Below are positions 12,501 to 64,000 of a DNA stretch of 64,000 bases, piece by piece. Origin of the DNA: Phaeosaccion multiseriatum (taxonomy: Eukaryota > Protista > Ochrophyta, other classes); assembly GCA_965112735.1 (NCBI GenBank), contig OZ218964.1:186001-250000 (forward strand), given 5' to 3'. Numbering within the stretch: position 1 is the stretch's first letter; each line of letters begins with the position of its first letter. The position numbers and the translations under genes were made by a program. Below the pieces are notes generated by a model. It was not told where the DNA came from and did not search any database. It saw only the letters and a list, made by a program, of their open reading frames with translations.

Positions 12501-14638
12501 AGAGCGCTTCTGCACGGCTTTGGCGGCTCGATACGGCGCGGAGTGGCTGCCAGAGGACGACCCTGTCCGTAGCGCCATGCTCGCGTTGAAGGAGAAGAGC
12601 TACTTTGAGCTTTCCTCCCAGCATATGCTAGCGTTGCTGCGCTGTCTCGTCAACGACACTATGGACGTGGAGAGAGTGAGCGCCCGCGTGAACGATGCGC
12701 TGGAGCAAGTCACTGCTCTGCTTGCTGCCAAGAAGAGAGCGGAAGCGTCGGAGAAGGAGCTGGCCGCTGCCTTTGAGGCCGGCAAGGGCATGTTCGAGGG
12801 AAAGAGGCTCAGCAGGAGGGAGGTGACGGTGGCAGCTGAGGCGACCAGGAAGGCGACGATGGAGTACAACAGGTACGTGTGTTTGTGTGTTTGAGGAAGC
12901 GCGCAGCGTTGGTGTGAATAGGGGGGCAGGGGGTGGAGGGGGGGGCAGTAGTGATTGATACCAAACTCGAACTGTCTTGACGACAGGTCTGTTTTCCCTG
13001 TCTGCTGCCTCCTTCACGCTTGCCTCGCCTCGCATGCGGCCGTGCCCACCCACTGCCCTCTTCACTACCTTGTTGTAGGGCTGTGCGGAGGCTTCCTCTT
13101 CGCCGAGAGGCGCTGGGCCAGGACAGAAACATGTCTCGATATTGGGCCCTCCCTTCGGAGCCCACTCACGTGTACGTGGAGTCTCACGGCTCCACCGAGT
13201 GGGGGCGCTACTCTCACCAGGTGCGTCGCATGAGGAGTCATACGAGAAGCAGGCACTCAACACACACAACCTGACGTTGCTTTAGTTTCAGTTTCTGTTC
13301 ATTAAGCGGCTATAGATCTCACAACGTCCCTTCCTCCTACCGCCGTCTGTGATTATTTCTTGGACGTCGTCGAGCAGGCGGAGATCTCTGCGCTGCTGGA
13401 GGGCTTGCTCCAAAAGGGCATGAGAGAGTCCAAGCTGAAGGCCGCCTTGCTGGAGGCGCTGGACCGGGTTCAGGCGGGCTTGATACCCTTGTCGGGTATT
13501 GCCGTCCATCCGAGAGATCTGGAGCCTGTTGATGTGGTAGACAGGATTTCCAGGCGAAGCACACGGGTGCGAGTGAATCAATTGAGCGCCGCCATTGAGA
13601 TGCAGGACCTTGAGGCAAGGCAGGCGAAGGAGAGGGAAGAGGAGCAGGCGAGGAGGAAGGCAGAGAAGAGGTTGGGCAAGTGGGGCGCTTCCCTAATCAG
13701 CAGCACCCCGGAGGAGGAGTACGTGCCCTTGCTTCGAGCGTGGCAGCATCACAGCCTCAATGTGGCGGAGCAGGGCTTTGAGAACCTCAAACTTGAGCTC
13801 AAGAGCACGGAAGAGAGGATCGGAGGGCAACTTGGGCACTTAGTGGAGGCACCTCGTACGCACGGGGCGGTGGAAGAAAAAGAGGGAGCAGAGACACCGC
13901 CACACACGGCGGAGAAGGAGGTTGCCCAGAGCACGACCGCAGGCGACGGTGGGGATGAAGGCGGCGGCGGCAGCAGGAGCACCAGCAGCACCGCCCTCTC
14001 GGCGTGGACAGGAAAGGAAGCGGCGTCAATAACGGGCGCGGCTGTGGCGGCTGCAGGCGGGATGGGTATCATGGAGTCTGAAGAGCAGAAGAAGACTCGA
14101 GAGAAGGCCATTAAGGAGATCCTGAAGCAAGAGGAGGAGATGCGGGTGGCAGAGGAGGCGGCCATGGCCCTGGAGGCTGAAAGGAAAGCCCTCGAAGGTG
14201 CAGCACCAGAGGCTGATGCTGATGCTTCCGTCAAGGGAGAGAGTGGCGGAGCTGATGATGCTGATCCATCTGCCGCACCGCTTGAAGAAGGTGCCCCACA
14301 GTCGGGTACTGCTGAGCTACCCAACGGGGGGGTGGGCTCTGCTGCCTTAGTGGTGGCACCCCGTCCTCCAGAGGGGCGCGTCATGCGTTCGGACATGTCT
14401 CGGCTCGAGAGCCTTCGCACGAGGAAGAAATCACGCACCGGAAGCAGCAGCAGTGGCGGCGTGGTTCGCAGCAGCAGCAGCCGCAGGGTTCCGATCCCTC
14501 CGCCCACCAAGCCCGTCAAGAAGGGCGCTGGCCGCACGGCGTGGTGCGAGAAGCTTGATCAAGCGACCGCCGTGAGCCACCTGGTGACGGCCGTCTTAGC
14601 CTTGGAACAGGTACTACGTGTGTCTCTCTGCCTGTCTA

Positions 14639-24000: not shown

Positions 24001-25676
24001 CCTCCCTCCCTCCCTCCCTCCCTCCCTCCCTCCCTCCCTCCCTCCCCCCAAAGTTCCTTGTACACGGGCCTTGCGCAGCCCCCGAGCACGTACTTGCCAA
24101 GAACGACGATTACTGGACGGCCCTCATGGTGTGCGCCGACGGCGGCTTCACCGAATGCTGCAAGCTCCTCGTCAAAGCAGGCGCCAGCTCCTGTGACTTT
24201 GGCGCAGACGGACAGACTGCGCTGGACCTTGCCGGCCGGGCTAACGAACATATCTGCGTCAGGTGAGGGAGTGAGGCTCTGGTGTGGGGGCGAGCCGTCC
24301 CAATCCTCACTCACACACGCAAATCAACACGGAGCTTTTGAGCACATTTGTTTGTATGTACACCCTCCCAATGCTTGTCCATGCTTGCCCATATGCTTGC
24401 CCATATGCTTGTCCATGCTTGCCCATATGCTTGTCCATGCTTGTCCTCCTTTCCCCAGGTACCTCGCTTCGCTCGCAGCACCGAGCTCAGCGGATTTCTG
24501 GGGGGCGGTGGAGGACGGAGATACCGAGCGAGTGCTCGAGTGGTTGGCCACTAACGGTCACTTGGTGCACGTGGTGAACGACGAAGGGCGGACGCCACTC
24601 TTGGTCACGTGCCTCGCAGGACATCTCGACCTTGCCAACTGCCTGCTGCAGGCAGGGGCCAAGGTGAGAGGGAGGACGAGGGAGGGCGAGCAGGAGGATG
24701 AGGATGAGGAGGATGAGGAGGAGGAGGGGGAGGATGAGGAGGAGGAGAAGGAGGATCGAAGAGGAGGATGGTGGGGAGGAGGAGGGGGAGAAGGCAACCC
24801 ACACACAACCCATCCGAACACGGACGTGCGATGAAGGTCCTCTGAGTCGCGCTGGGCTGGACCATGGAAGACCCCTGAAAGCTTGCTTCCCTTTCTGACC
24901 TCCCCCCCCCCCCCTTCGCATTCTCCGCCTCCTTCCTTTGGTCGATGCCCCTCCTCCTGTACCTTCTCAGGTGGACTTCCAGGACCCGTCGGGTACGTGC
25001 CCCATCGACGTAGCCGTGGTGCTGGGGCGGCTTGACTTGGTCAAGAGCTTGGTTCAGCAGGGGGGCGCGGACCTAGAAGTGGCCAATCAGAAGGGGTGGA
25101 CGCCACTTATGCAGGCAGTCATGACCAGCGATCTGGACATTATTCGGTGAGAAGGGGGAGGATTGAGTCCTCATACTTTCACTTGCTCATTCACTCTCTC
25201 TCTCACTCCCTCACTCACTCATTCACTCACTCACTCACTTACTCACTCACTCACTCACTTACTCACTCACTCACTCACTCACTCACTCACTCACTCAGTC
25301 AGTCAGTCAGAACCCTTTTGATTTGTTGAATTGATTGAGTTGGTCTCTCGATTTAATGATTGCTCCTCTTGGGGATAGGATAGTCCTGACTCTTATCCTC
25401 TCTTGGTCTTGCTTTGTCCGCTCCTTGCTCCTTGCTCTTCGCTCCTCGCGCCCGCGCCATCCTCCCCCGCGGGTACACAGCTTCTTGGTCGACTCGTGCG
25501 CCAGGGTCAACGCCAGCAACAGCGATGGCAGCACGGTACTGGACATTGCTGAGATGGCGGGGAAGAGCCACGTGGTGGAGTATCTGGAGACGAAGGGGGG
25601 CTTCAGTTCCATCGATGTCAGGAAGCAGATCTCGGCCGTGGAGGAGGGCAAGAGGGGCCTCTTTAAGTTGTGGTGA
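21084..25676 (+). CDS. Ankyrin-repeat protein with a long charged, disordered N-terminus
   Basis: Ankyrin consensus in successive exons: GRTPLMIACALG, GWTPLMVACGGGH, GSTPLMWACGGGH, WTALMVCADGG, GQTALDLA, GRTPLLVTCLAGH, GWTPLMQAV, GSTVLDIAEMAG. Confidence 0.85.
23307..24047. repeat. About 740-bp near-perfect (CCCT)n array in an ankyrin-gene intron
   Basis: Visible array with only a few phase slips. Confidence 0.95.
25189..25310. repeat. Intronic (CACT)n microsatellite
   Basis: Visible array. Confidence 0.9.
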
Positions 25677-47127: not shown

Positions 47128-48415
47128 TTATTTGTTAGTTACTTGTAAGTATCGTTGATGAAGGGCCTGCTGAGCTCTCATCATGGTCAAGACGAGAGTC
47201 GACCCGTTCCAGCTTGAGTTGCTGAGCCCGGCCTCTTGCGCATTCAGAATCTGTTGGAAGCACCTCTCAGCCAGCGGGCTCGGCATGTAGACTTCGTGTA
47301 GCGGCGGCACGTCGTCAACCAGAGGCCGCAGGAAGTAGCTCAACGCGGGAAGCAAATTCCTCGAGGCGAGAAAGTCTTCTGTAGAGAGGATTCGAGGCCG
47401 TGTGCCGCCGGCACTCTCGACTGCCAGTTGGAGCGTCTCTGGTGTAATGTTAAAGGCCTCACAGGCGGTGTTATACACCGCCGGTGCTGGTGGTGTATGA
47501 CTGCTGCGCCTACCAACTCCCGTACTTGCCACTCGCGGCTGTGCACTGAGCCGGACGATGACCTGCGACACCAAGTCAACCGGAGTGGCGTTCATAGCGT
47601 GCGCCACAACCTCCCCGTGCTTGCTTGCCTGCTCAATCATGGACGTGAACACGTCCCCGCGCGTGGGGGCAAATCCTGTGGAGGTGTGCCCTGCGACGAC
47701 TGGGACTCTGTAAACACTGACGTCCAGGCCCTCCTGCCCTGCCTGCGTGACGAGCTTCTCTGCTACCCACTTCAGGGTTTGGGGGAAACGAGACAAACAG
47801 CGAGAAGGTGTGAGCATAGCGTGATAAGAGGGTAGAGAGCAAGAGTAACGCAGCACTGTCCATGATCGTACCTTGCTTTGGTAGTACCCGAGCTGCTTGC
47901 CGAGCGTGCACCCCGAGGCAGGAGCTGCAGTCATGTCTCCCAAGGGCGCGTCGGCGGGTATCCTCCCGTCCTCGTTGGCCATGTCCGGAGTTAGAGCAGC
48001 TATTGTGGACACCATGTGCAGCGTCTTCAAAGATTTCGTAGCAGCGAAGCTGAGCACATGAAGAGTCCCCAGTACGTTCGGCGCGAACAGCTGCGCATAG
48101 CTCTTGGAGTAGCTGATGAGAGCGGCCGAGTGGTAAACGAGAGTCACTGTGCTGGCCAGGCGCTGATACACTTCTTTGGAAAGCCCGAGAGTCGGAGAAG
48201 TGATATTCCCCTTGTAGACCATCAGCCTCGCTCTTTCCGACTCGCGTAGAGTAAGCTTGGCTTCTTTCAAGCCGAACAGAGTGCGCTGCATGGCGTCCTT
48301 ATCATCCAAAGCGCGAACAATGCAGTGCACAGTCGACTGAGGGTGAGCATGCAGCAAGTCCACCAGCAGATACCGCCCTACGAATCCTGTCACGCCTGTG
48401 AGCAGGATGGACTCT
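47128..48415 (-). other. Terminal thioester reductase (R / extended SDR) domain
   Basis: ILLTGVTGFVG (Rossmann fold), VHCIVRA, LVYHSAA, NVLGT, MVSTIA, and GYYQSK|WVAEKL (YxxxK) once intron 47770-47871 is removed; VYRVP. Confidence 0.9.
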
Positions 48416-51400
48416 GCTACTGGTGTGCTCAACCTCACACCTCCTGCTGATGCCTGCCACGCCATTTCCCGTATCGTGGCGGCGATTTCGCTCGGCAGAT
48501 ACGCATCCGCCCACAGATCCGGAGCTTCTCGCTTACCCACAAGATCCGCCTCGAACTCTCCGTCAGCGCCGTTGCGACTGTGGGCTCTTCGCGACATACG
48601 CACCGCGGGCACCCCTTCGAGCAGCACATCGTCCGTCTGCTGCAGCCCGGGACCAATGAGAGTTCCCGGAGACACGCCGCAAGCACGGGGAAGAGACGCC
48701 GAGGCAGCAACAATGGATCCTGCCCCTACCGTCACCCTTCGGCCAACCTGAACCTTCTCAAATAGAACACAACAGGTGGTGCTTTCCTCGCTGTGAGCTG
48801 GAAGCGCCCTCCCTTCTTCCACGCTCCCAGTCACGCTGTAATCAAAGGGTAGAGACGCCGAGTCGCCTGCCCCCGCTGTCGCCCTTCGTCCAAGAAGGAC
48901 CTTCTCAAGCAGACTACAGCAATTGGTGCTTTCGTCACTGCGAGCTGGAAGCCCCCTCCCTCTTTCCACATGCACGACTCGTCGGGCATCGACCACGCAG
49001 TCCCTATCCACAACGCTTCCTGCCCCCAAGTGCACCAAATCGAAGCTGGACAGGCCATCCGTTGCAAGCACCACCGCATCTTTGCCCACTTCAGCTCCCA
49101 TGGCTCGTAACCACAAGGAGTGTGCTGCAGTGCCAGCGAGGCCGTTGACACCACTCTGTCTGGCTACCTGCGTGAACATAGTGCTGAACAAGTCTCTGTG
49201 GAACGTCACGCCCCCGACGGCCGCGTAGCAACCTGCGCGAGCTCGGCCAACGACGCCCCACTTCAGCACCACAGCCCACACAATCATAGCCATACTGAGT
49301 GACAAGAGAATCACAGGCGACATGACCAGAGCCAGCCACCTACCCACCGCAGTCACAAGCCACTGGGCCAACAGGGTGCTCGCGTACACACTGGTGAATT
49401 GAAACAGAAGAATGGCAACAGGAGCCACGATGGAGTACATCATGGTTCCCGCACCAGCCCACCACGCGAGTCCCCCACCCGCCCGAGGCTCCTGCTGCTG
49501 CTCATGCCGCTTGTGAAGCTTGACTCGTGTCACTAGGTCGCCACTGCGAAGAGTTCTCTCTCGCACCTTCGGATCGAAGGACGTCGATGAAGACGCACAC
49601 GTCAATGGACCGACCACAGAAGTATCGCAAAGCTCAGACCCCGGACACAGACAGGATCCTGCTGCTGTCACCGTGCAAGCTCCAAGCTTGACTGTCCCTG
49701 TATATCCTTGCGCCCGGGTGGCGAAGCTCCCCGACGCCACAGAGTGAGACCCCAGATCTAGCAAAGCAGGGTCCAGCACAGGGGAAGGAGCGCTCACTTT
49801 GGCAGTCCAGGCGACGCGAGCGCCCAGAGAACGAAGCCATATGACCATGCCAGGCCCTCCTGAGTGCAGAACCATGGACCGGGGGTACACCAGTCGCATC
49901 ATCACGTCGACAGCATGGACCTCTTGCCCCGTGACGCCGCGGCCACTGCTGCGGCTGCTGATGGCAGCAAGGGCTCCCAAGCATCGCCTCAGAGCGACAC
50001 TCATGGCGGTCATGCAGATGCCCGCAACTGAATAGGACAAGGCCAGAATCAGCATTGGCTTCGCCAGATACTGCTCCGTTGTCAGCTCCTTCAGCGGCGC
50101 GAGAGTGTCCACAAAACCAAGGGCGATGGGAAGCAGCGGCACCAGCGCCAGATCGAAGGTGGCGGCACATGCAGCCACGAGGTAGCCCACGTCGAGGGAG
50201 CGATAGTCCGGCACATAGCGTCCAAGCTGAGGCACGTACGTGAATAGGCCCCACGCTTTACTCATCTCCCCCCAGAAAAAGTACGCGGGTATACTCGCGG
50301 CCGCCATGCAAACTGCGGCCAGCGCGAAGCCAACCACAGTTCTCATGACGTCTTTCACGAGTGTAGCTGCAGGGTCATTCACACTGGGCAGCAGGGAGCT
50401 GCTCCCCATCCTATCAGCATTGTCGTCGCACTGCTTGGCCGGAGAGCCCCCCCACTCTGTGCAAGGGGCAAGGGGCCCACACCGCCCGCTGACCACCGTG
50501 GACGGTCGCAAGCGTACCATTTCGCCCATGGTTGTGCCTCCAAACACCTGAGACGATGCCCCCAACACGCAATCTGCGCCAACGGTGATTTGTCGGAGAA
50601 GGAGATGGTGGTCCTCTATCACCGCAGGCCGAACCCGACAAAACTCCTCCACAGTGGACTGCCGCCCCAAGTGCACCAAGTCGAACTCCGATACCGACAC
50701 CGAATGCAGGCGACACCCATGCCCAATCTTCGCTCCGAGTGCGCGAAGCCACCATGTCCACACCACACTCCCATGCAGCGGCAGCCGCTGCAACGCAAAG
50801 TCCGTCACGCGATCCACAAAGAGCCAGCGGAAGTAGTACCCGCTATTGATGGGATAAGACCCCGCCCGGTACCTGCCAATGACCACCCACTTGGTCAGCG
50901 TCACCACCGCCATGAGCAGAAGAGCCCACGAGAGGAAAGCGAGAGGTACACAGGCCAGCGCGGTCCACCTGCCCCACTTGTCTAGCACAATCGAGTCAAG
51001 GGCGATGACAGCGGGCAGCGCAGACGCGGCGACCAGCAGCGAGCTGTAAACCATCGCCACGATGCCCATGCAGAAGCTGACAATGTCGGAGGAGGACGAG
51101 CCAACGTAGTCAGCATCCCTGCCGTCCAGAGCACGGTCACCATCTTCTCTCTCGTCAGCATCACTGGCGTCCAGAGCACTGTAGCCTTCTCTCCTCTCGT
51201 CCTCCCGCACAGCAGCGGCGTCGCTGGAGTCTGCTTTGATCACCACGCCCACACCTCTATTGTCTTCTAAAGGAAATAAAAGCCCCAGTATATGCCGCGC
51301 GATATCTGCCGGTGTCGGGTGTTCGATCGAAATCGAAGGCGGTAGACTAAAGCCGACCCACGCGGAGAGTCGGTTGACAATCTCCACCGAAGCCAACGAG

Positions 51401-54400
51401 TCCACACCGGCCTCCATGAGGAGGGTGGAATCATGAATCAGACCACCTTCGTCTCCAATGCAGTGCTCCACAACCTGCTTCACCTTGTTCACGACCATCG
51501 CCTGGCGCGCCACCGGTGGCAGGTCCAACAACTCCTCATGTAGCTCCGAAGTTCCTTCTCCTGCTTCCAGATCCCCCTTTACATCGCCCAAAAGCCCTTC
51601 GAGCATGTGAACACGCCCACCTCTCGTGGCCTTCCCATACATGGCCCAGTCCATCCCAGGCAGGATGGACACATCACCCAAAGACGCTGAAGACGCTGAC
51701 GACATCACAGCGGCATCTAAGGCAGCCATGCCCAGCTCAGCTGACACCGTGCCCACACCCGCAAGCTCCAACTGCTTTTGAACGATATCGAGCTGGGCGG
51801 CCATACCAACGTCAGCCCACGGTCCCCACTGCAATGACATCCCTGCGAGGCCGAGGTGTCGCCTGTGCCGCATCAAACCGTCCACAGCCGCGTTCGCCGC
51901 AGCGTAGTTGGCCTGTCCAGCGTTGCCCAGTACTCCAGCCATGGATGTGAAGCACACAAAGAAATCCAGGCTTGAGGCGTGATCCTCCTCCCTCGACCAA
52001 CTCAAAGAAAGCTCGTGCAAGTTGACCGCTCCCTGCACCTTCGGTCGGAAGACGTTCGTCACGCTCTCCGCCGTCTGCTCTCCCATCAGCTTATCATCCA
52101 ACACCCCGGCAGCATGCACCACGCCGCGCACAGGGGGCAGCAGAGGCAGCACGCCCCCCAGGCAAGTCCGAAGTGCCTCAGCATCAGCAACATCACACGT
52201 AGGAGTATGGATCAGCTCCACCTTGTTCTGAAGCTGCTGCCATTGTTCTGTCATGCTCTCGGCGACCTTCCCACTCCTCGACAGCAGCACAAGGTGACGA
52301 GCGCCCCTCGACGCGAGGTGCTGAGCAGTCACGAGGCCGAGAGCCCCCAGACCGCCGCTGATGACGTACGTGCCATCGGACACGACTGGTACACCATACA
52401 AGGGGTTGGTCAGCACCACCTTGCCGATGTGCTTCGCTTGGCTCATGAGTACCATGGCCTTCTGAGTATCCTCCCTCATGTCAAAGGGTATGGTTGGTAA
52501 GGGCTTCACATTGCCAGACATGCAGTCCTCAGCCAGATGCTGCAGCTCGTCGCTTATCCAGCCCGGCTCACCCGCCGAAAAGTCGACATCGATAATGGCG
52601 CCCACAGCGACGAGGTTGTACCTCACATCGGGCCGGGCGGTGCGCATCTGGTCGTGATTCCACACGCCTCGCTTGCCAATCTCGACGAATGTACCACCCT
52701 CGCTTAGCATGGCCAGCGAGAAGGGAATGAAGTCGTCGCTCAGAGAGTTGAGCACCACATCGACCTTCACCTCCCCCATGGACAGCTTGAACGCCTCTGC
52801 GTCTCGCGATGACGCAATGTGCTCCACTCCCAAGCTCCGGAGGAAGTCATGCTTCACAGCAGCACCAGCAGTGGCGTACACCTCTGCGCCGACCCGCTGA
52901 GCATACTGCACGGCAGCAAGGCCCACACCGCCCGATGCAGCGTGAATCAGCACCTTCTCTCCAGCCTTGAGGTCGTGGAAGGCCTTCACCACCGTCAAGC
53001 ACACGGTGGGAAGTGCAGCGGCCTGCTCGAAGCTCAGCACGGCCGGCATCACAGCCAGGCACGCATCACTCGTCGTCATATGACTGCGCAAACATCCTCC
53101 GTCCGCAAAGCCAAACACTGCGTCGCCGACACGGAAGCGCGAGCTTCCTCCGACTCTGATCACCTCCCCGGCGAACTCGGAGCAAGGATCCCCAGGATCG
53201 CCAGGGTACATGCCAAGCACATTAAGCACGTCCCGGAAGTTCAGGCCAACAGCCCTGACTGCCACCTCTACGATGCTGCCAGCTGGGTCAAGGAGCTCAT
53301 GTTTGCCCACATCAACATCATCGCGAAGGAGAAAGGCATTGGCTATACTACCTCTTGCCCTAAGCTCCAGGGAAAACGGAAGATTCAAAGCTGGGCGTGC
53401 AAGCCGAGGCATCCAGCACTGACCATCGCGTACCCACACATCTTCTGTGGTGCCAGGGAAGGCCAAGCCTAAGGCAACCTCGCTGTCTGAGGCCTCCTTG
53501 TCGCTCAGGTCCACCACGCGAATCTGCATGTAAGGGTGCTCCATCCTTGCAGTCCGCACCAAACCTGCCACCCAGCTGTGACGCCAGTCCTCGCCGCTGT
53601 CGACGCCTCTCGTCAAAACCGTCAGGGGCATATTCGACGTAGTCGACAGGCTCCTGAGTAGAGCCATCAGGGCGTAAGCCGCTCGTGCTTGCTGGCCCCC
53701 TTCTGCGTCTTCTTCGCCAGCTCCGGGTATCAGCACGTACAAGACGCGAGCCCACTCATCCTCTCCAAGAAGAAGAGCATCATCATCCCCGGAGACGTCT
53801 ACCCCCCCATATCGAGTGTGGACGTGCACGTTCTGCGGAACGCAGCGCCGCACTACAGCCATAATTGCAGTCTCTCCCTCCCTCTCGTCCTGTGGAATAA
53901 CCACCAGCCACTTCTGTGGCGGCGCCGCCTCAGCAGGGTCAGTATCACTACCAGGGGCCTCCTCCTGTGTAGACGGTTCAGCAGCCTGCCACTCCAATGC
54001 GTACATTGCACGACGAACGGGGCTGGCACGCACAAAGCCCCTCGCCCGCTGCACACGGAAGCCCCGCATCTCCACGAGCACCTCTTTGCAGTCGAAGTCT
54101 GCAATGCGGATGTCAACCTTGACGCTGCCCGCCACTGACTGGACCTCAGTCAGCTTCGTGTGCACCCACACGTTCTTTCCCGTCATGGAGGCGGACACGA
54201 TCACCTCGTCAAAGCCAGCAGGTAGGAATGGAGAGCTCCCCCCCTCCTTGAGCAGCTTCCTTGGCAGCGCTTGCATGATGGCATGGGTAGCATTGTCCAG
54301 CACCGCGGGGTGCAGAGCAAAGCCCTTCATCTCCCACGGCTCGCACAGCTCCTCATCCATGGCACACACGGCCGACAGAACCTCTCCGTCCCCTCCGTAC

Positions 54401-57400
54401 ATGTGGCGGGTCCGCTGAAAGCGGGGGCCGTACTGGAAGCCGGCGTCTGCGAAAGACTTGTAGAGCTCACTCGATACGTCCTGCTCGCCAACTCTAGCTC
54501 GAATGGATTCCACGTGCAGCGAAGCACGCGCCGTGCTTCGCTCCAAGACAGACACGTGCTTCATTCTCGCCGTGGTGCCCTTGTCGCCCGTGGCACCTCC
54601 GAAGAACTGCATGCTTGCATCTGCCGTGTGAAGGGCACTCATCCCGGCACAGACCATTGGATGGCGGCTTTGCGCATGGTCCGTGCCGGCCTGTTGGAAA
54701 CCCTCAATCTCCAGTGGAACCACAAAGCTGGCTCCTCGCAGGACTACCTCCTGCTCCACCCCGAGCTGTCTTCCTCCTAGAGCAACGACGACGCCCACTT
54801 CAATGTACGTCACCCCCGGAATGATCACCACATTGTTGACGGCATGGTCCTTGAGAAGGTCCTTGAGGTGAGGGGAGAAGGGGCTGGCGAGCCGCATTCC
54901 GTCCCCCTCTTGGACCACCTCGCCACTGGGCATAAACGCCAGCGGAGGCCTGAACCAGCGGAACGCTTGGCGTGTGGGGTACAGATCGCCACGCTCACAC
55001 TCGTCGTCCTTCGGAAGAGCGTCGATGAGGCTAACACCCTCTCCGTCGGCATGCGTGGCCGTACTCCCAGCTCTGGGACCGGATAGCACGGCGTGAGCAT
55101 TGGTTCCGCCGGCACCGAAAGAGCTCACGGCAGCAACGAGCGGTCCTGTCCACCCGCCTCGACCCACTGGCTCCATGGTCACAGGCAACGTGACAGGGAC
55201 GCCGGCGAGCTCCAGCTCGGGATTGATGTTCTTCAAATGCAGGTTCGGAGGCGCGGCGCGGTGCTGCAGCACCAGTACGGTCTTGATGAGGCCTGCAATA
55301 CCTGCGGCACCCTCCAGATGGCCGATGTTGGCCTTCAGCGCACCTACCACCAAGGCATTTCCCTCGCTGCGGTCCGGGCCACAGTACACCGCCTTGAGGG
55401 CGCTTATCTCGATGGGGTCACCCAGCGCCGTTCCCGTGCCGTGCGCCTCCACGAAGCTAACATCTGCGGGGTCTCTTTCCGCTTCTGCCAGCGCGGCAGA
55501 CAGGAGCTGCTGCTGAGCAAGAGGACTGGGTGCCGTCAGACGAGCGCTGGCCCCATTGTGGTTGACCGCACAGCCCTCGATCACCGCTAGCACAGTGTTC
55601 CCGCTGGCCACAGCATCATCCAGGTGCTTCAGCACAATGGCACCACATCCTTCGCCTCTGACATACCCATTTGCCGATGCGTCAAACGTCTTGCAGCGCC
55701 TGTCGTAAGGCAGAGAAAGGTAAGTGAGGTGTGAGTGGGGTGTCACGGAAGGTCTGGTTTAACTGTAGAGAAGACGCCCAAGAATGAGCTGCATGAGCAG
55801 TAATAGGATAAATGAATCAGAGCACACACACCGGAGCGGCCGGTGCAACTTACCAGTCGGGGGAGAGGAAGGTTCCCGCAATCAAGGACTGAAAGGTGCT
55901 CTTCCCGAGCAGCAGGTTCACGCCACCGACCACCGCCGAGTCGCACTTGCCCAGGCGGAGGTTGCTGCAAGCAGCGTCCAGAGCCACCAGAGACGACGAG
56001 CATGCTGTCTGCAGCAACGTGCTGGGGCCACAGAGACCCAGAGTGTAGGATACGCGATTCGCAATGTTCGAAGCCGTCATGCCCATTCCGCCGTAGGCGC
56101 TCTGGGCGGTATCTCCTGCCACGAAGCCCCAGTCCGTGTCCGACAAGCCCACAAACACGCCGGTGTTGCTGCCCCGCAGGCTGCTCTTGCTGTGGCCCGC
56201 GCGATGGAGGGCCTCGAAGGCCACCTCCAGCATGAGGCGCTGATTGGGGTCCATTGCCTGTGCCTCGGCAGCACTGATGCCAAAGAAGGCATTGTCGAAC
56301 ATCTCAACGCCCTCGATGAACCCTCCCTGTAGCTGCACCTCGCCCTTCTTACTCTCCCACCTGTCGTGTGGCGCTGCCGTAATGCAGTCTCTGCCCTCGC
56401 ACATCAGTGACCAGAACTGCTCCGGGCTGTTGGCTCCACCGGGGAGGCGACACGCCATACTCACGACAGCGATGGGGGCTCGAGAGTCCGAGGAAAAGTG
56501 CTGTCTTATCAGCACCTCTTCACGCTCTGTATCACGCGGCATCTCAAGAATCTGGGCCTCGAGCCACGCGGCCATTGCAGACACCGATGGATACGAGAAG
56601 AAGGCGCCATTCGACACGGGGACACCACACCAGGCCTCAATTCGACTGCGAAACTCCACAGACGCCATCGAATCGAGTCCGGCTTCCATCAAGGGCATCG
56701 TTGCTGCCAAGGTGAAGTCCTCGCCAACGCACTGGACTGCTGTGTCCGTCAGGACCTGTTCGATCCTCTCCCGCCGTGCTGACTCCGGCAAGTGCAGGAG
56801 CTCCTCCCGTACCTCGGCATTGACGCTGTAGCCCTTTGACGCATCACCACTTCCTCTGCGGTCCGTCAATTGCCCGAGGAAATCGCTGTGCACAGGGTCC
56901 AAGCTCGCTCGAAATTTGCCCCACCTCATGGCCGGCATGATGGCCACCTCCTGCACGTTGGCTTGCACGTGACTTGCAAGGATGGCACCCAGTGCCTTCA
57001 TACCCAGCGCCGATGAGATCAGGCCCACTCCAGCCATCTCCGCAGCTTTGGACACCATTTCAAGCCGCACCGCCGTGCCTACGTCGCCCCATGGGCCCCA
57101 GTGAACGTTGGAAGCAGGAAGGCCAAGCTGGTGTCGGCGGTACCGCATCAGCCCATCCAAAGCAGCGTTGGCCCCGGCATTGGCGCTCTGATTGGACAAG
57201 CCGAGCAAAGCGGACGTCGACGAATACGAGGCGAAGAAGTCGACCTCCTCCCTGCCGCTCGCCGCCCACTCAAGGCACAGCGCGTGGAGATTCCAACCTC
57301 CCTGGATCTTGGCGGCAAAGACATTTCGCACGTTCTCTTCCGTCTCGACCGACAACATCCCCCTTGCGCCAATTACCCCCGCTGCGTGAATCACACCCCG

Positions 57401-60400
57401 AACATGAGGCAGCCCCACCAAGGCCGTTGCTACAGCATCTCGAAGCTGGCTCATGTTGGAAACATCGCAGGCCACGGCCACAGCGGTGACATTCTCCATG
57501 CTCTGCAGGGCCTGCCACAGCTCTGAAACTTCCTCCGCCGCCCGGCCGCTTCGAGATAGGAGGAGCAGGTGTCTAGCGCCTTGGGACACCAAGTGATTCG
57601 CCGTCACCAGACCCAGCCCCCCCAGACCACCGCTGATCAGGTAGGTCCCATCCTCCCTGCACGCGAAACGATCGACTCCTGCCGATGTCAGATGGAGTGT
57701 GCTGGGCACCAGCCTCGGAGCGAGGATCTCACACCCTCGAACCAGCAGGTCCACGCCTCGTCCTCCGTCCTGAGCTTCTGCAGCCAGCGTCACAGCCTGG
57801 GAGACAGTTTGGTCTTCCCTCTCCTCTACTCCGGGTTGAGCATCCTCAGACTGTGGAGACATGGCACACTCAAGGTCCACGTGGTTCACGGCGAGGTCGC
57901 CCCGCTCCAGGCGTATGCTTCGCACCAGCCCAGCTGCCCAGCTGTCCTGCCAACTAGCACCGCTGTAGACACCCGTTGTCACCACGGTGATCGGCATCAC
58001 TGCCTCGTCCCCGTCTAAACTCTGTACTGTTTGCACAAAGTGGATTGCCCCATCGGTAGCAGAGCACGTCCCTGACGCCAAGTAGAAGAGATGGGCCCCA
58101 TGTGGCTGCGCGTCCGAGCCGACCGCCTCCACCATGTGCACCTCTACACCACTTGCTGTCGCCGCGCTTCGGATACCTTCCAAGGCTCTATGGTTGCTCG
58201 ATGCGTGGTGGCCTTCGGCTGCCTTGGGAATCACGACGAGCCACGGAAGGCTGCTGGTCAGCGAAGCCCGCTGCGAAGCCGTGGGCACCTCCACCGTCTC
58301 CCACTCAACAACATATAGTGGGCCCTGCTCCGCTTCACTCCGCGTCTGAGGCGCTGCTGTGGCTCGCGCTGTGTACCAAGGAAAGGCTTTGCGCGTTGGG
58401 AACAGGATGTGCTCCTTGCCCTTACTCTTTTGCTGCTGCACTGTGCACAGAGCCGCTCCAAACGAATCCTCAGAGCTCTTCTCGCGCGTGACAGAAGATA
58501 CCCACACCAGCCCCTCGCGACGCTCGCACTTGGCTCCCATATTGCTCAGCACAAGGTTGGGGCCCACCTCAATGATGCTCAGGTCAGCCCCCCTCCCGTC
58601 TCCCATCCAGTGCTCCACCAGCGTGTGGATGCCTTCTGCGAACAGCACTGGCGACAGCATGTGTTGCACCCAATACGTCGCCTGCGTCACCTCCTCCTCT
58701 CTCGCCACCTCACCCGTCACGTTGGACACCAACGGGATGCGTGGGGCGTTGAATGACACCTGCCTCAGAACCTCCTCCAGAGTACGCACAGCGGGCTCCA
58801 TCAGAGGAGAGTGGAAAGCGTGCGACACCTCCAGAGCCTTACAGCCCACCCCATCTGCCGCGAGCTTCTCCACCACCTTGTCCACAGCGCTGCGAGCTCC
58901 AGACATCACGCTCGCCCTCGGTCCATTCGACGACGCCAGCACCACCTCCCCTGCCCCCCCCGCAGCGTCGATGCTTGCCAAAGTCGCCTCCTTGCCTGCC
59001 CTCACTGCGAACATCACCCCCTCCCCCTCGGGGCAGGCCTGCATGGCGGCTCCTCTCTTGGCGGACAGCATCAGCCCATCCTCCAGCGACATGACGCCGG
59101 CCACGCACGCCGCCACTACCTCGCCCAGGCTGTGGCCCATCACCATGGACGGCTCCACGCCCTCCGACTTCCACAGCTCGCACAGGGCGTACTCCAGCAC
59201 AAATAGGCACGGCTGGCAGTAGCGTGTCTCCTTCAGCAGCGCTGCTTGTGCAGTCTTCTCCTCCTCCTCCTCCCCGTCCTCAGCGGCGGTTGGGTACATG
59301 AGCTCCACCACAGACTTGTCTAGCCAGGCCCGCTCCATGAGCAGCCTGCTGCACCGCCGCACGCACTCGCGGAACACGCCCTCCTTCTCGTACAGCTCCC
59401 TGCCCATGCCCACATACTGCGAACCCTGCCCTGTGAACAAGAACGCCACTGGCGTTTGGGCTTGATAAACATGAACAGCTGGTGCCAAATCGCCCCGCTT
59501 CTCCCCATAGCTCCTCAGCAGCACGTGTGCGTTTGCTCCTCCCGCCCCGAACGAGCTCACCCCCACCAACACGTCTCCCTCGTCCTCCAGCTGCACCATC
59601 GCTGAGGGGAGCTGCACGGGGAAGCCGTCCATGTCCAGCTCTGGGTTGATGCTCTCGAGGTGGAGGTTGGCGGGCACAGCGCGGTGCTGCAGCATCAAGA
59701 CGGCCTTGATGATACCGGCAATACCCGCCGCACCCTCCAGATGGCCAATGTTGGTCTTGACCGCACCTACTACGAGCGGGAAAGAATCTTCACGGTTCTT
59801 TCCATACGTGGCCCTGAGAGCGCTCATCTCAATGGGGTCGCCGAGCGAGGTTCCCGTGCCGTGCGACTCCACGATGCGTACCTCGGAGCCCTCTCGACCG
59901 GCCTCACGCAGCGTCGTCTCGATGAGTCTCTGCTGGGCGGCGGGGCTCGGGGCAGTGAGGCGGGCACTGGCTCCGTTGTGGTTCACGGCACAGCCCTCAA
60001 TCACAGCGAGGACCGTGTCTCCGACAGCGAGGGCGCCATCTAGACGTTTCAGCACAACGGCACCGAATCCTTCACCACGCACGTATCCGTTTGCCGACGC
60101 GTCGAACGTCTTGCAGCGCCTGAGAAGGGCATGGGAATTGTGGGATGGGGTGAGGTAAGTTGACTTGGTAAGGCACTCAAGTCGTTCTCACTGTGCGATT
60201 TGCCAGAGAGGCGATGGCCAAAGGGAGAAGAGGGGTGAACACAAACAGGAATGGAAGCACTCCACACATAAGCGCACGTACCAGTCGGGCGATAAGAAAC
60301 CACTTCCCTTCAGCCTTTCGAAGCTCTGCGTGCCCAGCAACAGATTCACTCCGCCCACCACGGCTGCGTCGCACTTGCCCATGCGTAAGCTGCTGCAAGC

Positions 60401-63400
60401 GCTGTCCAGGGCCACCAGAGAGGACGAGCACGCCGTGTCAGTGGTCATGGACGGGCCCTGCAGTCCGAGCGTGTACGACAGACGATTGGACACGCTTGCC
60501 CCGGCTGCGCCCATGGTGCTATACGCGCCTGTCGAGGATGACCCTTCCCCGAGTGCTCCCCAGTCACTGCCGCTCATGCCCACGAACACTCCGGTCTGAC
60601 TGCCTCTCAGGCTTTGCTTGGTACAGCCCGCAGTCACAAGCGCATCCAGTCCCACCTCCAGCATCACCCGTTGGTGTGGGTCCATTGCAGAAGCCTCAGC
60701 ACTGGATATGCCGAACACAGATGTATCGAACATTTCCACGCCGTCGATGAAGCTTCCTTGCCACTGCTGCTCATCCTCCTCCTTGCTCGCCCAGCGGTCG
60801 AGCGGAGCTGGCTGGACACAGTCCTTGCCATTGCTAAGCATGGCCCAAAACTCCTCTGGGCTGTTCGAACCACCTGGCAAGCGGCACGCCATGCCCACAA
60901 TAGCCAGGGGGGCAGTCATGCTACCTCCAGCCGGTTCAGCATTCCTGTCCTCATCTTCACCCTCCTCAGCCCCCAAGACCAAGCCCTCGAGCCACTCTGT
61001 CAGCGCTGCCACTGAGGGGTAACTGAAGAGCACGTCGTTGGGGACCGGCACGCCGAAACGAGCTTGAAGTCGACTCCGAAGCTCCACCGTAGACATGGAG
61101 TCCAGCCCAGCCTCCATCAAAGGCCTCAAAGCGTCGAGCTCGATGCCTGCTTCCCCAATGCATGCTTTTGCCATCTCCATGATTAAAGCCTGCAGCATGG
61201 GCTTTCGCTCACCCTCCGACAGCTCCAGTAGGTCGCGCTTAACCTCGGTAGTCACACTGTTGCTAGCCTTGTTCTGCGGTCCCACCATCGAAGCCTCTCT
61301 AACGAGAGCATCGAGCATCCCCGGGTTGCTAGCCGTCTCAGAGAAGGCGGGCCAGTCCATGCCAGGCAGAACCAAGAGCTCGCGTGATGCCGCAGATGGG
61401 GCTGACACGCCGGCATCAAGCGCCGCCATACCCAATGCCTTACTGATGAGCCCAACGCCGGCCATCTCCAGACTGGCCATGGCAGCTTCGGACCGAGCGG
61501 CCATGCCAGCTTCGGCCCACGGCCCCCACTGGAGGGCCACAGAGCTGGAGTAACCGAGGCGTCGACGATGCTGCATCAACCCGTCCACAGCAGCGTTGGC
61601 TGCAGCATAGTTGGCCTGGCCTGCATTGCCTAACACACCTGCCATGGATGTGTAGGACACAAAGAAGTCCAAGGGCCAGGCCAGCTGCAGCGACAGCTCG
61701 TGCAGATTCCAAGCGCCCTCCACCTTCGGCTTGAAGACCTCTTCGATACTCTCGGGCGTCTGGTCCACCAGCAAGCGATCGTCGAGCACGCCGGCAGCAT
61801 GGATGACACCTCGCACGGGCGGCATGCTGCTGAGCGCCGTGCCTAGGGCCTTCCCAAGCGACTGTGCGCTAGACACGTCGCACGATACAGCCCTGGTGCT
61901 CACCCCGCCGGGCACGTTGAGAAGCTCCTCCCACAGCGCCTGGGAGTCCGCCTTGACCTTTCCCCTCGCGAGAGCAGTACAAGATGACGAGCTCCTTTAT
62001 CAGCCAAATGCTTCGCAGTCGCCAGCCCAAGCGCCCCCAGCCCACCGCTGATAACGTAAGTCCCGTCTCGCACGACGGGAATGCCACACTCAGGGCTACT
62101 GAGCACAACCTTCCCAATGTGCTTCGCAGTTCTGAGGAAGTTCATTGTCTCCGCAAGCTCATCCCTTAAGTCGAATGTCTTCACTGGTAGCGCCTCGGCC
62201 CTGCCCGCCTCACTGTCCGCTGTCAGCTGCTCCAGCCCAGCGAACGCCCAGCCCTGCTTCTTGGCCTTGAAGTCGTCTGCTATCATGGAGTCCAGCGCAA
62301 TCCGGTCGTACAGCACGTCGGGCCTGGCAGCCTTCATCGCCTCCCTGGTCCACACGCCTCGCTTGCCGATCTCCATGAAGCGCCCATTCTTCGTCAGCAG
62401 CTCCAGAGAGTAAGGGATGAAGTTGTCCGACAGGCAGTTCAGCACCACATCCACCTTCGCAGCTCCCATGGAAGCCTTGAAGGCCTCCGCATCTCGCGAC
62501 GACGCAATGTGCTTCACGCCCAGACCTCGCAAGTAGGCGTGCTTCTCCTCGGATCCAGCAGTGGCGTAGATCTCCGCTCCGATGCGCTGAGCAATCTGCA
62601 CAGCCACCAGACCCACTCCACCTGACGCGGCATGGATGAGCACCTTCTCACCACGCTTCAAGCCAGCGAGTTGCTCAAAGGCGTGCACCACTGTGAGCCA
62701 CGCGATAGGCAGCGCTGCCATGTCATCGAAGGTCCTGTTCGAAGGCATGTTGGCCAGGCACACGTCACTTGTCGTTACGTGGGAGCGGAAGCAGCCCTTG
62801 TCCGGAAACCCGTAGACCTTGTCTCCCACTTGAAAGCGCGACTTTCGCGATGCTCGAGTGACCACTCCCGATAGCTCGATGCCAGGCAGTCCAGGGTCGC
62901 CAGGGTACAGGTCGAGCACATTCAGCACGTCTCTGAAGTTGAGCCCCACCGCCTTGACACAAATTTCAATCTCCCTGTCCTGCAAGGCAGTGTCTCTCTC
63001 GGAAGGGAGTACGTCCCTGCGCTTCAAGCCTCCCTCGATGCTTCCCCTCGCTATGAGATCGAAGGAGAAGGGAAGGCGGACTACCGAGGAGCGAGTCAGC
63101 TGAGGCGTCTCGCACTCTCCTCCTTGCACACGCACGTCCTGATTCTGGAGGGGAAGACACAGCACCAAGCTCATGTCCTCCACATCCGCTTCCACGACCA
63201 TGATCTGCATCTGTGGCCGCTCGATACGAACGGAGCGAATTATGCCAAAGACCAGCATGTGTGCCCACCCCTCGCCCCCCCCGCTCAGCGTGTCGTGTAG
63301 TAGCACCATCAAGGGGACTGGTCTCTTGGCCAGCTGCTGCGTTACCGTCAGCAGCTTCTGTGCTTCCTGCTGAGCGGCGCTGGCTGATGACCTTGCCGTC

Positions 63401-64000
63401 TGTCCCTCCTCTCTTTCACCGCCGAGCACGTATAGCACTCGCGACCACTCGCCCCTCTCCAATGCCCTCACCACATCCTGGTCATAGACAGACTCCTGCA
63501 CACGCAGCGTCACGTGCTCGGGCATGGACTGCTCAATCCGCTTCACCAACGCTGCAGCTGCACTTACTCTATCTACCAAAGCCAGCCACGTCTCCTTCTC
63601 CACACCATTCTTCCCCGTGGTGGTTGCCAGAGCCAGCGCCTCGTCTGGCTGCCACTCCAGATAGTATAAGGCTCGACGAAGAGGGTTCAGGTGCGTGAAG
63701 CCCTTGGCCCTCTGCAGCTTGACGCCCTTCATGGTCACGAGCACGTACTGGCTGTCAAAGTCGGCAATGACAATGTCAAAGTTGACGCTGTCGCGCTTGT
63801 CGCTGATCTCGGTGAGCACGGTATGCACCCACACCTTGTTCCCTCTGATGGCGCCCTTCGCAACCACGTCATTGCATCCAGCTGGCAAGAATGTACCACC
63901 CTTGGTCAGCTCAGAAGGCAGAAGCGCAAGCATGGTGTGTGCGGCACTGTCCAGCACGGCGGGGTGGAGGTAGAATCCACGCACCTCCCACTCAGAGCAC
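47128..64000 (-). CDS. Giant modular type I polyketide synthase, 5' partial; exons 64000-60282 (apparent 1-nt frameshift at ~61962-61965), 60119-55854, 55699-47872, 47769-47128
   Basis: ORFs 61900-63984, 60188-61915, 55850-60082 and 47128-55746 link through one frameshift and two phase-2 GT-AG introns (SPD-TG|G-RCKTFDASANG). Canonical KS, AT, DH, ER, KR, ACP and terminal reductase motifs are present. Confidence 0.95.
47770..47871 (-). other. In-frame, stop-free intron (102 nt) in the reductase domain
   Basis: AAG|GTACGA...pyrimidine tract...TGAAG|TGG. Removing it restores the conserved YxQSKWVAE. Confidence 0.75.
48600..51090 (-). other. Pls/NRPS-terminal-like membrane domain: three repeats of [transmembrane hairpin + hexapeptide left-handed beta-helix]
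   Basis: Hydrophobic helix pairs followed by KWVVIGRYRAGSYP..YFRW and KWGVVGRARAGCY. Three copies of WLR(A/S)(L/M)GA(K/R/E)(I/V). Hexapeptide repeats ITVGADCVLGASSQV, VKLGACTVTAAGS and VQVGRRVTVGAGSIV. Terminal WGGSPA and LEGVPA. Confidence 0.75.
51280..56480 (-). other. PKS module n: KS, DH, pseudo-KR, ER, KR (B-type), ACP; no AT
   Basis: QTACSSS, AHGTGT and NIGHLE (KS); LKDHAVNNVVIIPG and HPAVLDNATH (DH); VRAVGLNFRDVL and LIHAASGGVG (ER); HAAGVLDD and GQANYAAAN (KR); AGVDSL (ACP). No GQGxQ or GHSxG motif between KS and DH. Confidence 0.9.
55700..55853 (-). other. Phase-2 intron (154 nt) in the KS of module n
   Basis: GAC TG|GTAAGT...GACAG|G CGC TGC AAG restores SPDWRCKTFDA. Confidence 0.9.
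56550..60915 (-). other. PKS module n-1: KS, AT (malonyl-type), pseudo-KR, KR lacking the catalytic Tyr, ACP; no DH or ER
   Basis: DTACSSS, SHGTGT and NIGHLE (KS triad); FTGQGSQ, GHSLG and HAFH (AT); SGGLGGLG but NQSANAGAN (KR); AGLDSM (ACP). Boundaries approximate. Confidence 0.9.
60120..60281 (-). other. Phase-2 intron (162 nt) in the KS of module n-1
   Basis: GAC TG|GTACGT...TTCTCAG|G CGC TGC AAG restores SPDWRCKTFDA. Confidence 0.9.
60960..64000 (-). other. PKS module n-2 (partial): DH (C-terminal half), pseudo-KR, ER, KR (B-type), ACP
   Basis: HPAVLDSAAH (DH Asp); VKAVGLNFRDVL and LIHAASGGVG (ER); SGGLGALG, HAAGVLDD and GQANYAAAN (KR); AGLDSM (ACP Ser). Boundaries approximate. Confidence 0.9.

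What the first reader, a model, noticed from the sequence alone, without database searches (positions are those of the whole stretch)
47128..64000. Giant multi-module type I PKS in a protist genome, extending beyond the window
Seen: about 16.5 kb of coding sequence (~5,480 aa) covering two and a half modules plus the terminus. The gene enters the window mid-DH, so the full protein is larger. Both visible KS domains keep Cys/His/His and all three ACPs keep the DS serine. Established: assembly-line PKSs of this type in microalgae and other protists are mostly orphan. Inference: a functional assembly line for a largely reduced, lipid-like polyketide.
Basis: partly seen in the sequence, partly recalled or inferred. 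Interest (0 to 1): 0.75.

Follow-up and report, generated by a model that had tools for sequence, protein, structure and literature searches.

The report
Probably disabled algal membrane-ended PKS copy
This is a real, intron-split, roughly 29-kb polyketide synthase gene of a protist that ends in an unusual membrane domain plus a reductase, but this copy of a very large gene family carries three defects found in no sister copy and is probably a recently disabled paralogue.

Summary
The minus strand from 47131 to the window edge encodes DH-ER-KR-ACP / KS-AT-KR-ACP / KS-DH-ER-KR-ACP plus a terminus. It is split by GT..AG introns, and the KS and ACP catalytic residues are present.

- **Whole gene:** it runs about 12 kb further, to C15 ~262.0 kb. 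It has a Cys>Ser loading KS with ACP and four extension modules, two of them without AT (~8,800 aa by my estimate).
- **Terminus:** between the last ACP and the thioester reductase lie ~960 aa. This is a divergent relative of the Pls/PosA polylysine-synthetase membrane domain, with three repeats of a helix pair plus a beta-helix.
- **Family:** five sister genes here share ACP-X-R, as do a few unstudied protist proteins. The genome holds at least ~110 KS domains.
- **Functional claim is weak:** this copy alone has a 1-bp deletion in KR2 (61962-61965), a 1-bp insertion in DH1 (upstream of the window), and Tyr>Asn at the KR3 catalytic site (57179-57181). The 20, 9 and 15 sister copies compared at these sites lack them.

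The scan has already reported the same terminus on other DNA of this genome. Verdict: new variant of a known kind, and this locus is probably a young pseudogene. Reads and RNA are needed to settle that.

The parts
63706..64000 (-). DH2, C-terminal part (the domain continues beyond the window edge); LHPAVLD motif present
   Evidence: PF14765 hit; motif
62101..62979 (-). ER2 (enoyl reductase), NADPH motif HAASGGVG
   Evidence: PF08240/PF00107/PF13602; motif
61511..62064 (-). KR2, interrupted by a frameshift; NYAAAN motif present
   Evidence: PF08659 split over two frames (profile 1-40 and 52-180)
61962..61965 (-). Lesion 1: the homopolymer run is one base shorter than in all 20 paralogous modules, which shifts the frame inside KR2
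   Evidence: it is the only frame-breaking private indel among 21 aligned copies
60989..61177 (-). ACP2 (GLDSM)
   Evidence: PF00550
60282..60910 (-). KS3, N-terminal exon part (DTACSSS)
   Evidence: PF00109 profile 3-222
60120..60281 (-). Intron (162 nt, GT..AG) at the conserved KS codon ..SPDW|RCK..
59654..60119 (-). KS3, C-terminal part (HGTGT, NIGH)
   Evidence: PF02801
58613..59443 (-). AT3 (GHSLG, HAFH = malonyl type)
   Evidence: PF00698
57086..57649 (-). KR3 (Lys and Ser kept, catalytic Tyr replaced)
   Evidence: PF08659
57179..57181 (-). Lesion 3: Asn codon at the catalytic Tyr position of KR3. 15 paralogous KRs have a Tyr codon there and only this copy has Asn
56561..56710 (-). ACP3 (GLDSM)
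   Evidence: PF00550
55854..56476 (-). KS4, N-terminal exon part (QTACSSS)
   Evidence: PF00109
55700..55853 (-). Intron (154 nt, GT..AG) at the same KS codon
55234..55699 (-). KS4, C-terminal part (HGTGT, NIGH); no AT follows
   Evidence: PF02801
54043..54906 (-). DH4 (HAVNNVVIIP, GFQYGPRF, LHPAVLD)
   Evidence: PF21089/PF14765
52411..53271 (-). ER4
   Evidence: PF08240/PF00107/PF13602
51811..52374 (-). KR4 (NYAAAN)
   Evidence: PF08659
51289..51474 (-). ACP4 (GVDSL), the carrier that feeds the terminus
   Evidence: PF00550
48403..51288 (-). X: divergent Pls/PosA-type membrane domain, three repeats of a hydrophobic helix pair plus a left-handed beta-helix
   Evidence: TIGR02353 E 1e-50, 172.7 bits, below the 423.1 cut-off; hydropathy; best outside hits are true Pls/PosA proteins; model pTM 0.73; Foldseek finds hexapeptide acyltransferases; dN/dS 0.27-0.43
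47131..48402 (-). R: thioester reductase (TGVTGFVG, Y-x3-K); stop codon at 47128-47130
   Evidence: PF07993 160 bits; TIGR01746 185.9 bits
47770..47871 (-). In-frame 102-nt GT..AG intron inside R (after GYYQSK). Sister copies are split at the same profile position (182)

Best explanation
This is a nuclear gene of a eukaryotic alga, about 29 kb long with 13 or more exons, for a modular type I polyketide synthase. It belongs to a large, lineage-specific family with at least ~110 KS domains in this genome.

Layout (shown): KS(Ser)-ACP loader; KS-AT-DH-ER-KR-ACP; KS-DH-ER-KR-ACP; KS-AT-KR-ACP; KS-DH-ER-KR-ACP; then a Pls/PosA-like membrane domain (X) and a thioester reductase (R).

Mechanism (inferred): the two malonyl-type ATs also load the AT-less modules. 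A starter plus four C2 units gives a short, mostly saturated chain with an oxygen at C5; sister copies with an intact KR would make a hydroxyl there. R releases the chain from ACP4 as an aldehyde or alcohol. X holds the terminus in a membrane and hands the lipid on. X lacks the one histidine conserved in true Pls enzymes, so a Pls-type condensation is less likely.

This copy carries three private defects: a frameshift in DH1, a frameshift in KR2, and loss of the catalytic Tyr in KR3. It is most likely a recently disabled paralogue and not a working assembly line.
For: - **Architecture:**
- **Introns at one KS codon:**
- **Family size:** (KS; ~64 cis-ATs and only one non-PKS AT).
- **X is homologous to Pls/PosA:** TIGR02353 E 1e-50. 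The exhaustive search gave 1537 hits. The top ones (P0009, P0014) score ~590 bits on TIGR02353, over its cut-off.
- **Three-repeat fold with beta-helices:**
- **X is under selection:** dN/dS 0.27-0.43.
- **ACP-X-R is conserved:** in five sister genes, and collinear in protist proteins P0084, P0102, P0082 and P0093.
- **R motifs are intact:**
- **Family His is absent from X:**
- **Lesions are private to this copy:** KR2 run one base shorter than in 20 of 20 copies. The DH1 segment is 201 nt against 200 nt in 9 of 9 copies. KR3 has Asn against Tyr in 15 of 15.
- **Paralogue exons are open:** 9 of 10 and 8 of 9.
- **Assembly is accurate in these repeats:** 20 x 3.15 kb of sister sequence hold no frame-breaking private indel.
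Against: - The two indels could be assembly errors; one lies in a homopolymer, and repeats are hard to polish. No reads were available.
- Apart from the two shifts there is not one in-frame stop in ~26 kb of coding sequence. X still shows dN/dS 0.43 against its nearest sister, so any decay is very recent.
- Private changes of 6 nonsynonymous to 2 synonymous, against 90:78 in the other copies, is not significant.
- Tyr>Asn could be a tolerated change that gives a 5-oxo product.
- The role of X is inferred only from a missing residue and from analogy. Nothing shows which of X or R releases the chain.
- Collinear (non-iterative) use of the modules is assumed.
Confidence: 0.55

Rival explanations
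1. The gene is intact and expressed. The two frameshifts are assembly errors, and KR3 Tyr>Asn is a real, tolerated change, so this paralogue makes a 5-oxo instead of a 5-hydroxy chain, released reductively.
For: One indel lies in a homopolymer run. There are no stop codons elsewhere, and all KS, ACP, AT, ER and R motifs are intact. X has dN/dS below 1 against its sisters.
Against: Twenty sister segments of 3.15 kb show no frame-breaking private indel, so the assembly is accurate in exactly these repeats. Both of this gene's long reducing exons are broken, while 17 of 19 sister exons are open. A base substitution at a catalytic residue is not a typical long-read error.
Confidence: 0.3
2. X is the true off-loading catalyst of the family. 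Like Pls or PosA, it would join the ACP-bound acyl chain to a hydroxyl or amine of a free acceptor, possibly the R-made alcohol. That would give membrane-extruded esters or oligomers, with R supplying the nucleophile.
For: X is homologous to the Pls/PosA condensation region and has the full three-repeat layout. Its beta-helices resemble acyltransferases. Scaffold residues conserved across the family are kept: KW..G, R154/W155, FD203L, E225. About 20 further PKS genes here end in ACP-X' with no R or TE at all, so X' must release something there.
Against: The only near-universal His of bacterial Pls-type domains (QTHLFEDRVMK, third repeat) is missing in X, its sisters and the protist X-R proteins. 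No other His is conserved. An intact R is always present in this subclass.
Confidence: 0.2
3. The region is bacterial contamination, or a recent bacterial insertion misread as a protist gene.
For: The PKS body is about as close to bacterial cis-AT PKSs (32-46% identity) as to eukaryotic ones.
Against: It has spliceosomal GT..AG introns at conserved positions. It lies inside a 2.7-Mb contig with eukaryotic chromatin-domain neighbours. Dozens of paralogues are spread over at least ten contigs.
Confidence: 0.01

Closest known systems
Pls / PosA homopoly(amino acid) synthetases (epsilon-poly-L-lysine, delta-poly-L-ornithine; NCBIfam TIGR02353; PMC10522769, PMC7179176)
   Same: A carrier-protein thioester is presented to a C-terminal region made of three repeats of transmembrane helix pairs and hexapeptide beta-helices. 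X finds these proteins as its best hits, with E down to 1e-57.
   Different: Here the carrier is a PKS ACP loaded with a polyketide, not an A-T pair loaded with a diamino acid. X scores 172.7 bits against a cut-off of 423.1. It lacks the conserved His motif of the third repeat and has insertions. It is followed by a reductase, which Pls and PosA lack.
Uncharacterised protist proteins with carrier-X-R: P0084 (environmental PKS AT-FMO-DH-ACP-X-R), P0082 (Prorocentrum/Polarella C-A-T-X-R), P0102, P0093 (Symbiodinium pilosum)
   Same: The same tridomain terminus, collinear over X and R in single alignments. The Pls His motif is lost in the same way.
   Different: Only 23-26% identical. Most are NRPS-type and not PKS. 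None has been studied.
Multimodular type I PKSs of microalgae (Shelest et al. 2015, PMC4661987)
   Same: Large nuclear genes that grew by module duplication and mix cis-AT and AT-less modules.
   Different: That paper does not mention a reductase, transmembrane or hexapeptide terminus. The family here is far larger (at least ~110 KS) and its modules are 90-99% identical to one another.
Nannochloropsis PKS clades with transmembrane helices or an MS2 reductase domain, proposed for long-chain hydroxy fatty acids and diols (Balzano et al. 2019, PMC6872974)
   Same: Stramenopile-algal PKSs drawn with transmembrane helices (AMP-PPT-KAS-AT-KAR), the layout of my hit P0134. Others carry a male-sterility-type reductase. 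The proposed products are reduced, hydroxylated lipids.
   Different: Those are single-module enzymes. The helices were not recognised there as a Pls-type domain. No sequence link to this gene was tested here, and the function is only proposed.
Reductive release domains of PKS/NRPS (TIGR01746, PF07993; e.g. myxochelin MxcG, carboxylic acid reductase)
   Same: R has the NAD(P)H motif TGxTGFxG and Y-x3-K, and it matches these families.
   Different: Normally R directly follows the carrier. Here ~960 aa of membrane domain lie between them.
KS(Ser) loading modules of polyene macrolide PKSs such as NysA (recalled from memory, not tested)
   Same: The first KS has Ser in place of the active-site Cys (TASSSS) with both His kept.
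   Different: Here the loader has no AT or DH, and it is split by about four introns.

Membership tests
Modular type I polyketide synthase | KS domains with the Cys-His-His triad | tested here: met
   KS1-KS4 keep Cys, HGTGT and N.GH. KS0 has Ser for Cys.
Modular type I polyketide synthase | Several KS-...-ACP modules in one reading unit, each with a carrier Ser | tested here: met
   Five KS and five ACP (G.DS[LM]) in order on one strand, joined by GT..AG introns.
Modular type I polyketide synthase | An AT in each module (cis-AT type) | tested here: not met
   Only modules 1 and 3 have an AT (GHSLG, HAFH). Modules 2 and 4 and the loader have none.
trans-AT PKS | A discrete AT gene serving the AT-less modules | tested here: inconclusive
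   The genome has ~64 in-PKS ATs and a single other AT, a FabD-like gene on C11. No dedicated trans-AT gene was seen.
Pls/PosA family terminal domain (TIGR02353) | Score over NCBIfam's curated cut-off (423.1 bits) | tested here: not met
   172.7 bits, E 1e-50, in three stretches. True members score ~590 bits.
Pls/PosA family terminal domain (TIGR02353) | Three tandem repeats of a transmembrane helix pair plus a hexapeptide beta-helix | tested here: met
   Hydropathy, the repeated KW..GR motif, the model and Foldseek.
Pls/PosA family terminal domain (TIGR02353) | The conserved His motif of the third repeat (QTHLFEDRVMK) | tested here: not met
   His is present in 19 of 22 outside sequences but absent in X, its sisters and the protist X-R proteins.
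Pls/PosA family terminal domain (TIGR02353) | Preceded by an adenylation domain and a thiolation domain that load a diamino acid | tested here: not met
   It is preceded by a PKS module and an ACP.
Pls/PosA family terminal domain (TIGR02353) | Makes an isopeptide-linked homopolymer | not testable with these tools
   This needs biochemistry.
Thioester reductase (R) domain | Family match plus the NAD(P)H motif and the Tyr/Lys pair | tested here: met
   PF07993 160 bits, over its cut-off. TIGR01746 scores 185.9 bits against 213.35, read through an unspliced intron. TGVTGFVG and Y-x3-K are present.
Functional (uninterrupted) gene | Every exon open in one frame and all catalytic residues present | tested here: not met
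   Frameshifts in KR2 and DH1, and Tyr>Asn in KR3. These hold at the level of the assembly; reads were not available.

The most novel reading that the evidence does not exclude
At the level of the family, the ACP / Pls-like membrane domain / reductase cassette would be an undescribed machine. It would reduce hydroxylated polyketide or fatty chains to alcohols and join or export them at a membrane. That would make it a candidate for building the long-chain diol or algaenan-type wall lipids of stramenopile algae, whose reducing and linking enzymes are unknown (PMC6872974, PMC11211512). This locus would be a freshly disabled member of that family.
Probability: 0.12. Interest if true: 0.8.

Novelty: new variant of a known kind. 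Interest (0 to 1): 0.4.

Why it matters
- **Release chemistry:** algal modular PKSs are almost all orphans. A terminus that puts a polylysine-synthetase-like membrane domain between the last carrier and a reductase has, as far as I could find, no biochemical description.
- **Spread:** it recurs in six genes here, with a reductase-less form in about twenty more, and in dinoflagellates and other protists. Understanding it could explain how protists hand reduced polyketide lipids to membranes or walls.
- **Study target:** this copy should not be chosen for expression. Intact sisters exist, for example on C13 and C2.
- **Gene-family evolution:** the family also shows recent module duplication or homogenisation, with modules 90-99% identical, and gene death in progress.

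Tried and rejected
- **Loading domain:** I found no adenylation, FAAL or AT domain upstream. tblastn with multidomain PKS queries found nothing beyond the first KS up to 19 kb further.
- **Tailoring genes:** ten neighbouring ORFs in the window gave only DDT and PWWP hits.
- **Solved Pls-type structure:** none by sequence or by fold.
- **Close relatives of X:** the best in 1.84 billion representatives is 33% identical. The word search found only NRPS-like proteins.
- **Literature on PKS-Pls-R:** nothing for TIGR02353 or for term combinations. An earlier agent's remark that the fusion was 'partly noted in 2012' could not be traced.
- **Organism name:** not established. The Chrysophaeum taylorii assembly does not fit (702 contigs).
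- **Relaxed selection in this copy:** the trend (6:2 against 90:78) is not significant.
- **Not done:** a KS phylogeny, because no curated algal reference set was at hand.
- **Left out by rule:** Exons were searched one by one by reference.
Full report
**Where it is.** The window is G000:C15:186001-250000 of a 67-Mb assembly in 22 contigs. On the minus strand, four long ORFs run from 47128 to the window edge. Pfam places the following on them, N to C: DH(part)-ER-KR(start); KR(rest)-ACP-KS(N half); KS(C half)-AT-KR-ACP-KS(N half); KS(C half)-DH-ER-KR-ACP, then a long unassigned stretch, then NAD_binding_4. KS3 reads DTACSSS and KS4 reads QTACSSS; both have HGTGT and N.GH. The three ACPs keep G.DS.

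**Gene structure.** Two of the ORF breaks are GT..AG introns of 154 nt (55700-55853) and 162 nt (60120-60281). They sit at exactly the same codon of the KS (..SPDW|RCKTFD..). KS2 and KS1, upstream of the window, have introns at that same codon. A 102-nt in-frame intron lies in the reductase (47770-47871). Sister copies are split at the same profile position. AT1 also has an intron. With DDT and PWWP chromatin-type neighbours, this is a eukaryotic nuclear gene and not contamination.

**Whole gene.** I fetched 60 kb beyond the window. The gene continues for about 12 kb:
- A first KS in about five small exons (L005:~1932 down to L004:~9636). Its active-site Cys is replaced by Ser (TASSSS) and both His are kept.
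- An intron holding a simple repeat, then ACP0.
- KS1-AT1-DH1-ER1-KR1-ACP1, then KS2-DH2, which runs into the window.
- No adenylation, FAAL or further PKS domain for 19 kb upstream.

The enzyme therefore has a KS(Ser)-ACP loader and four extension modules, about 8,800 residues by my estimate. Both ATs are of malonyl type (GHSLG, HAFH). Modules 2 and 4 and the loader have no AT. Genome-wide there are at least ~110 full KS C-terminal halves but only ~64 ATs, and one FabD-like AT outside PKS genes. AT-less modules are therefore normal here, presumably loaded by neighbouring ATs (inference).

**The terminus.** The ~960 residues between ACP4 and the reductase (48403-51288) match NCBIfam TIGR02353, the terminal domain of Pls/PosA polylysine and polyornithine synthetases. 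The match has E 1e-50 and 172.7 bits, below the curated 423.1, in three stretches. Hexapeptide repeats alone can give weak hits to this model: the control genomes ring too. I therefore checked further.
- An exhaustive search of 1.84 billion representatives gave 1537 hits. The best are ~1,320-aa A-T-terminal-domain proteins, and two that I tested score ~590 bits on TIGR02353.
- Hydropathy, the alignment and an AlphaFold model (pLDDT 67.8, pTM 0.73) all show three repeats of a long helix pair, a KW..GR motif and a beta-helix.
- Foldseek matches the beta-helices to hexapeptide acetyltransferases with TM-score ~0.5.
- No Pls-type structure is in the PDB.
- X is a selected coding domain, with dN/dS 0.27-0.43 among paralogues.
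- It is divergent. No outside protein is more than 33% identical. The one nearly universal His of the bacterial family (QTHLFEDRVMK in the third repeat) is absent from X, its sisters and the related protist proteins, and no other His is conserved. This confirms a claim made by an earlier agent on a sister locus.
- The reductase after X has TGVTGFVG and Y-x3-K.

**Distribution.** In this genome, ACP-X-R ends six genes: this one, C15:~11 kb, C2:~18 kb, C13:~1.057 Mb, C10:~2.59 Mb and C12:~0.85 Mb. Reductase domains occur nowhere else except one lone gene on C8. About twenty further PKS genes end in KS-ACP-X' without a reductase.

Outside this genome the same carrier-X-R order, collinear in single alignments, occurs in several proteins:
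- an environmental PKS (P0084);
- dinoflagellate C-A-T-X-R proteins (P0082 from Prorocentrum/Polarella, P0093 from Symbiodinium pilosum);
- a transcriptome protein (P0102).

PKSs that end in X without R occur in Stygiella (P0092) and in P0134. P0134's layout, A-ACP-KS-AT-KR-X, equals the Nannochloropsis 'PKS-Clade II' that Balzano et al. drew with unexplained transmembrane helices and proposed for hydroxy fatty acid and diol synthesis (PMC6872974). I found no paper that describes the PKS-Pls-R terminus. The PKS body has no close relative. The best matches are alveolate PKS/FAS-like proteins and bacterial PKSs at 45% identity or less.

**State of this copy.** It carries three defects private to it.
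1. **KR2 (window 61962-61965).** A homopolymer run is one base shorter than in all 20 paralogous modules, which shifts the frame.
2. **DH1 (about C15:255.12 kb, outside the window).** The frame shifts just before EWEISGFYLHPAVLD, with no room for an intron. The 201-nt segment measures 200 nt in all nine sister modules.
3. **KR3 (window 57179-57181).** The catalytic Tyr of QSAYAGAN is Asn. Exact pattern searches find the Tyr codon in 15 sister KRs and the Asn codon only here.

The matching long exons are open in 9 of 10 and 8 of 9 paralogues, while both of this gene's are broken. By my arithmetic the chance of that at the family's background rate is about 1%. In an alignment of 21 copies of 3.15 kb, this copy has the only frame-breaking private indel. 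Its private changes are 6 nonsynonymous to 2 synonymous, against 90:78 elsewhere; that is suggestive but not significant. The same alignment shows the assembly is accurate in these repeats, which argues against error. Still, there are no other stops in ~26 kb, so any decay is very young, and only reads can decide. I put 'disabled' at about 0.6-0.65.

**How it most likely works (family level).**
- Shown: the domain order and the motifs.
- Inferred: collinear use gives a starter plus four malonyl units, fully reduced except at the KR-only module 3. The chain on ACP4 then has a hydroxyl at C5, or a keto group in this copy.
- Inferred: R reduces the thioester to an aldehyde or alcohol.
- Inferred: X keeps the terminus in a membrane and passes the lipid on.
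- The rival, that X itself transfers the chain to a hydroxyl or amine as Pls does, is kept alive by the twenty R-less ACP-X' termini. It is weakened by the missing His.

**Relation to earlier work in this scan.** Earlier notes and follow-ups already describe the Pls-type terminus on other contigs of this genome, so the terminus is not new to the scan. This report adds the full model of this gene and the count and placement of R and X termini. It also adds the finding that this copy's KR3 change and both frameshifts are private.

**Limits.** The organism was not identified.

Noticed in passing
window 23307-24046: A (CTCC)n microsatellite of about 186 copies. It explains the GC-skew spike and the pile of overlapping ORFs in all frames. 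Smaller (GGA)n and (CTCA)n arrays lie at 24671-24794 and 25186-25309.
   Followed up: partly
L004:8988-9539 (C15:258988-259539), minus strand: The intron between the first KS and ACP0 is filled with a simple repeat that reads as (SLTH)n in one frame.
   Followed up: no
whole genome, e.g. C1:1216097/1221320 and C1:2390523/2395732/2400956: KS-DH-ER-KR-ACP modules 92-99% identical to this gene's module 2 occur in tandem at 5.2-kb spacing within other genes, and also within this gene (modules 1 and 2). This points to very recent module duplication or ongoing homogenisation.
   Followed up: partly
window 48790-48970 approx. (X residues ~776-836): A tandem duplication of ~45 aa (..GR.LPA.S.ES..CC.L.EKV..) lies inside the third beta-helix of X, at the place where bacterial relatives have the conserved His motif. 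The model has low confidence there.
   Followed up: partly
G000:C1:1221268-1223319 and C1:1226426-1228450: Two sister exons have shorter open frames (1500 and 1430 aa against ~1730-1880). Other family members may also carry lesions.
   Followed up: no
window 11128-12894 and 15136-16815, plus strand: ORFs with DDT and PWWP domains (chromatin proteins), which are ordinary eukaryotic neighbours. Eight other long ORFs in the window have no Pfam match.
   Followed up: no
G000:C10:2592229-2594885: The sister ACP-X-R terminus on C10 follows a KS directly, with no DH-ER-KR, and shows one TGA inside the X match. That could be an intron or a lesion.
   Followed up: no
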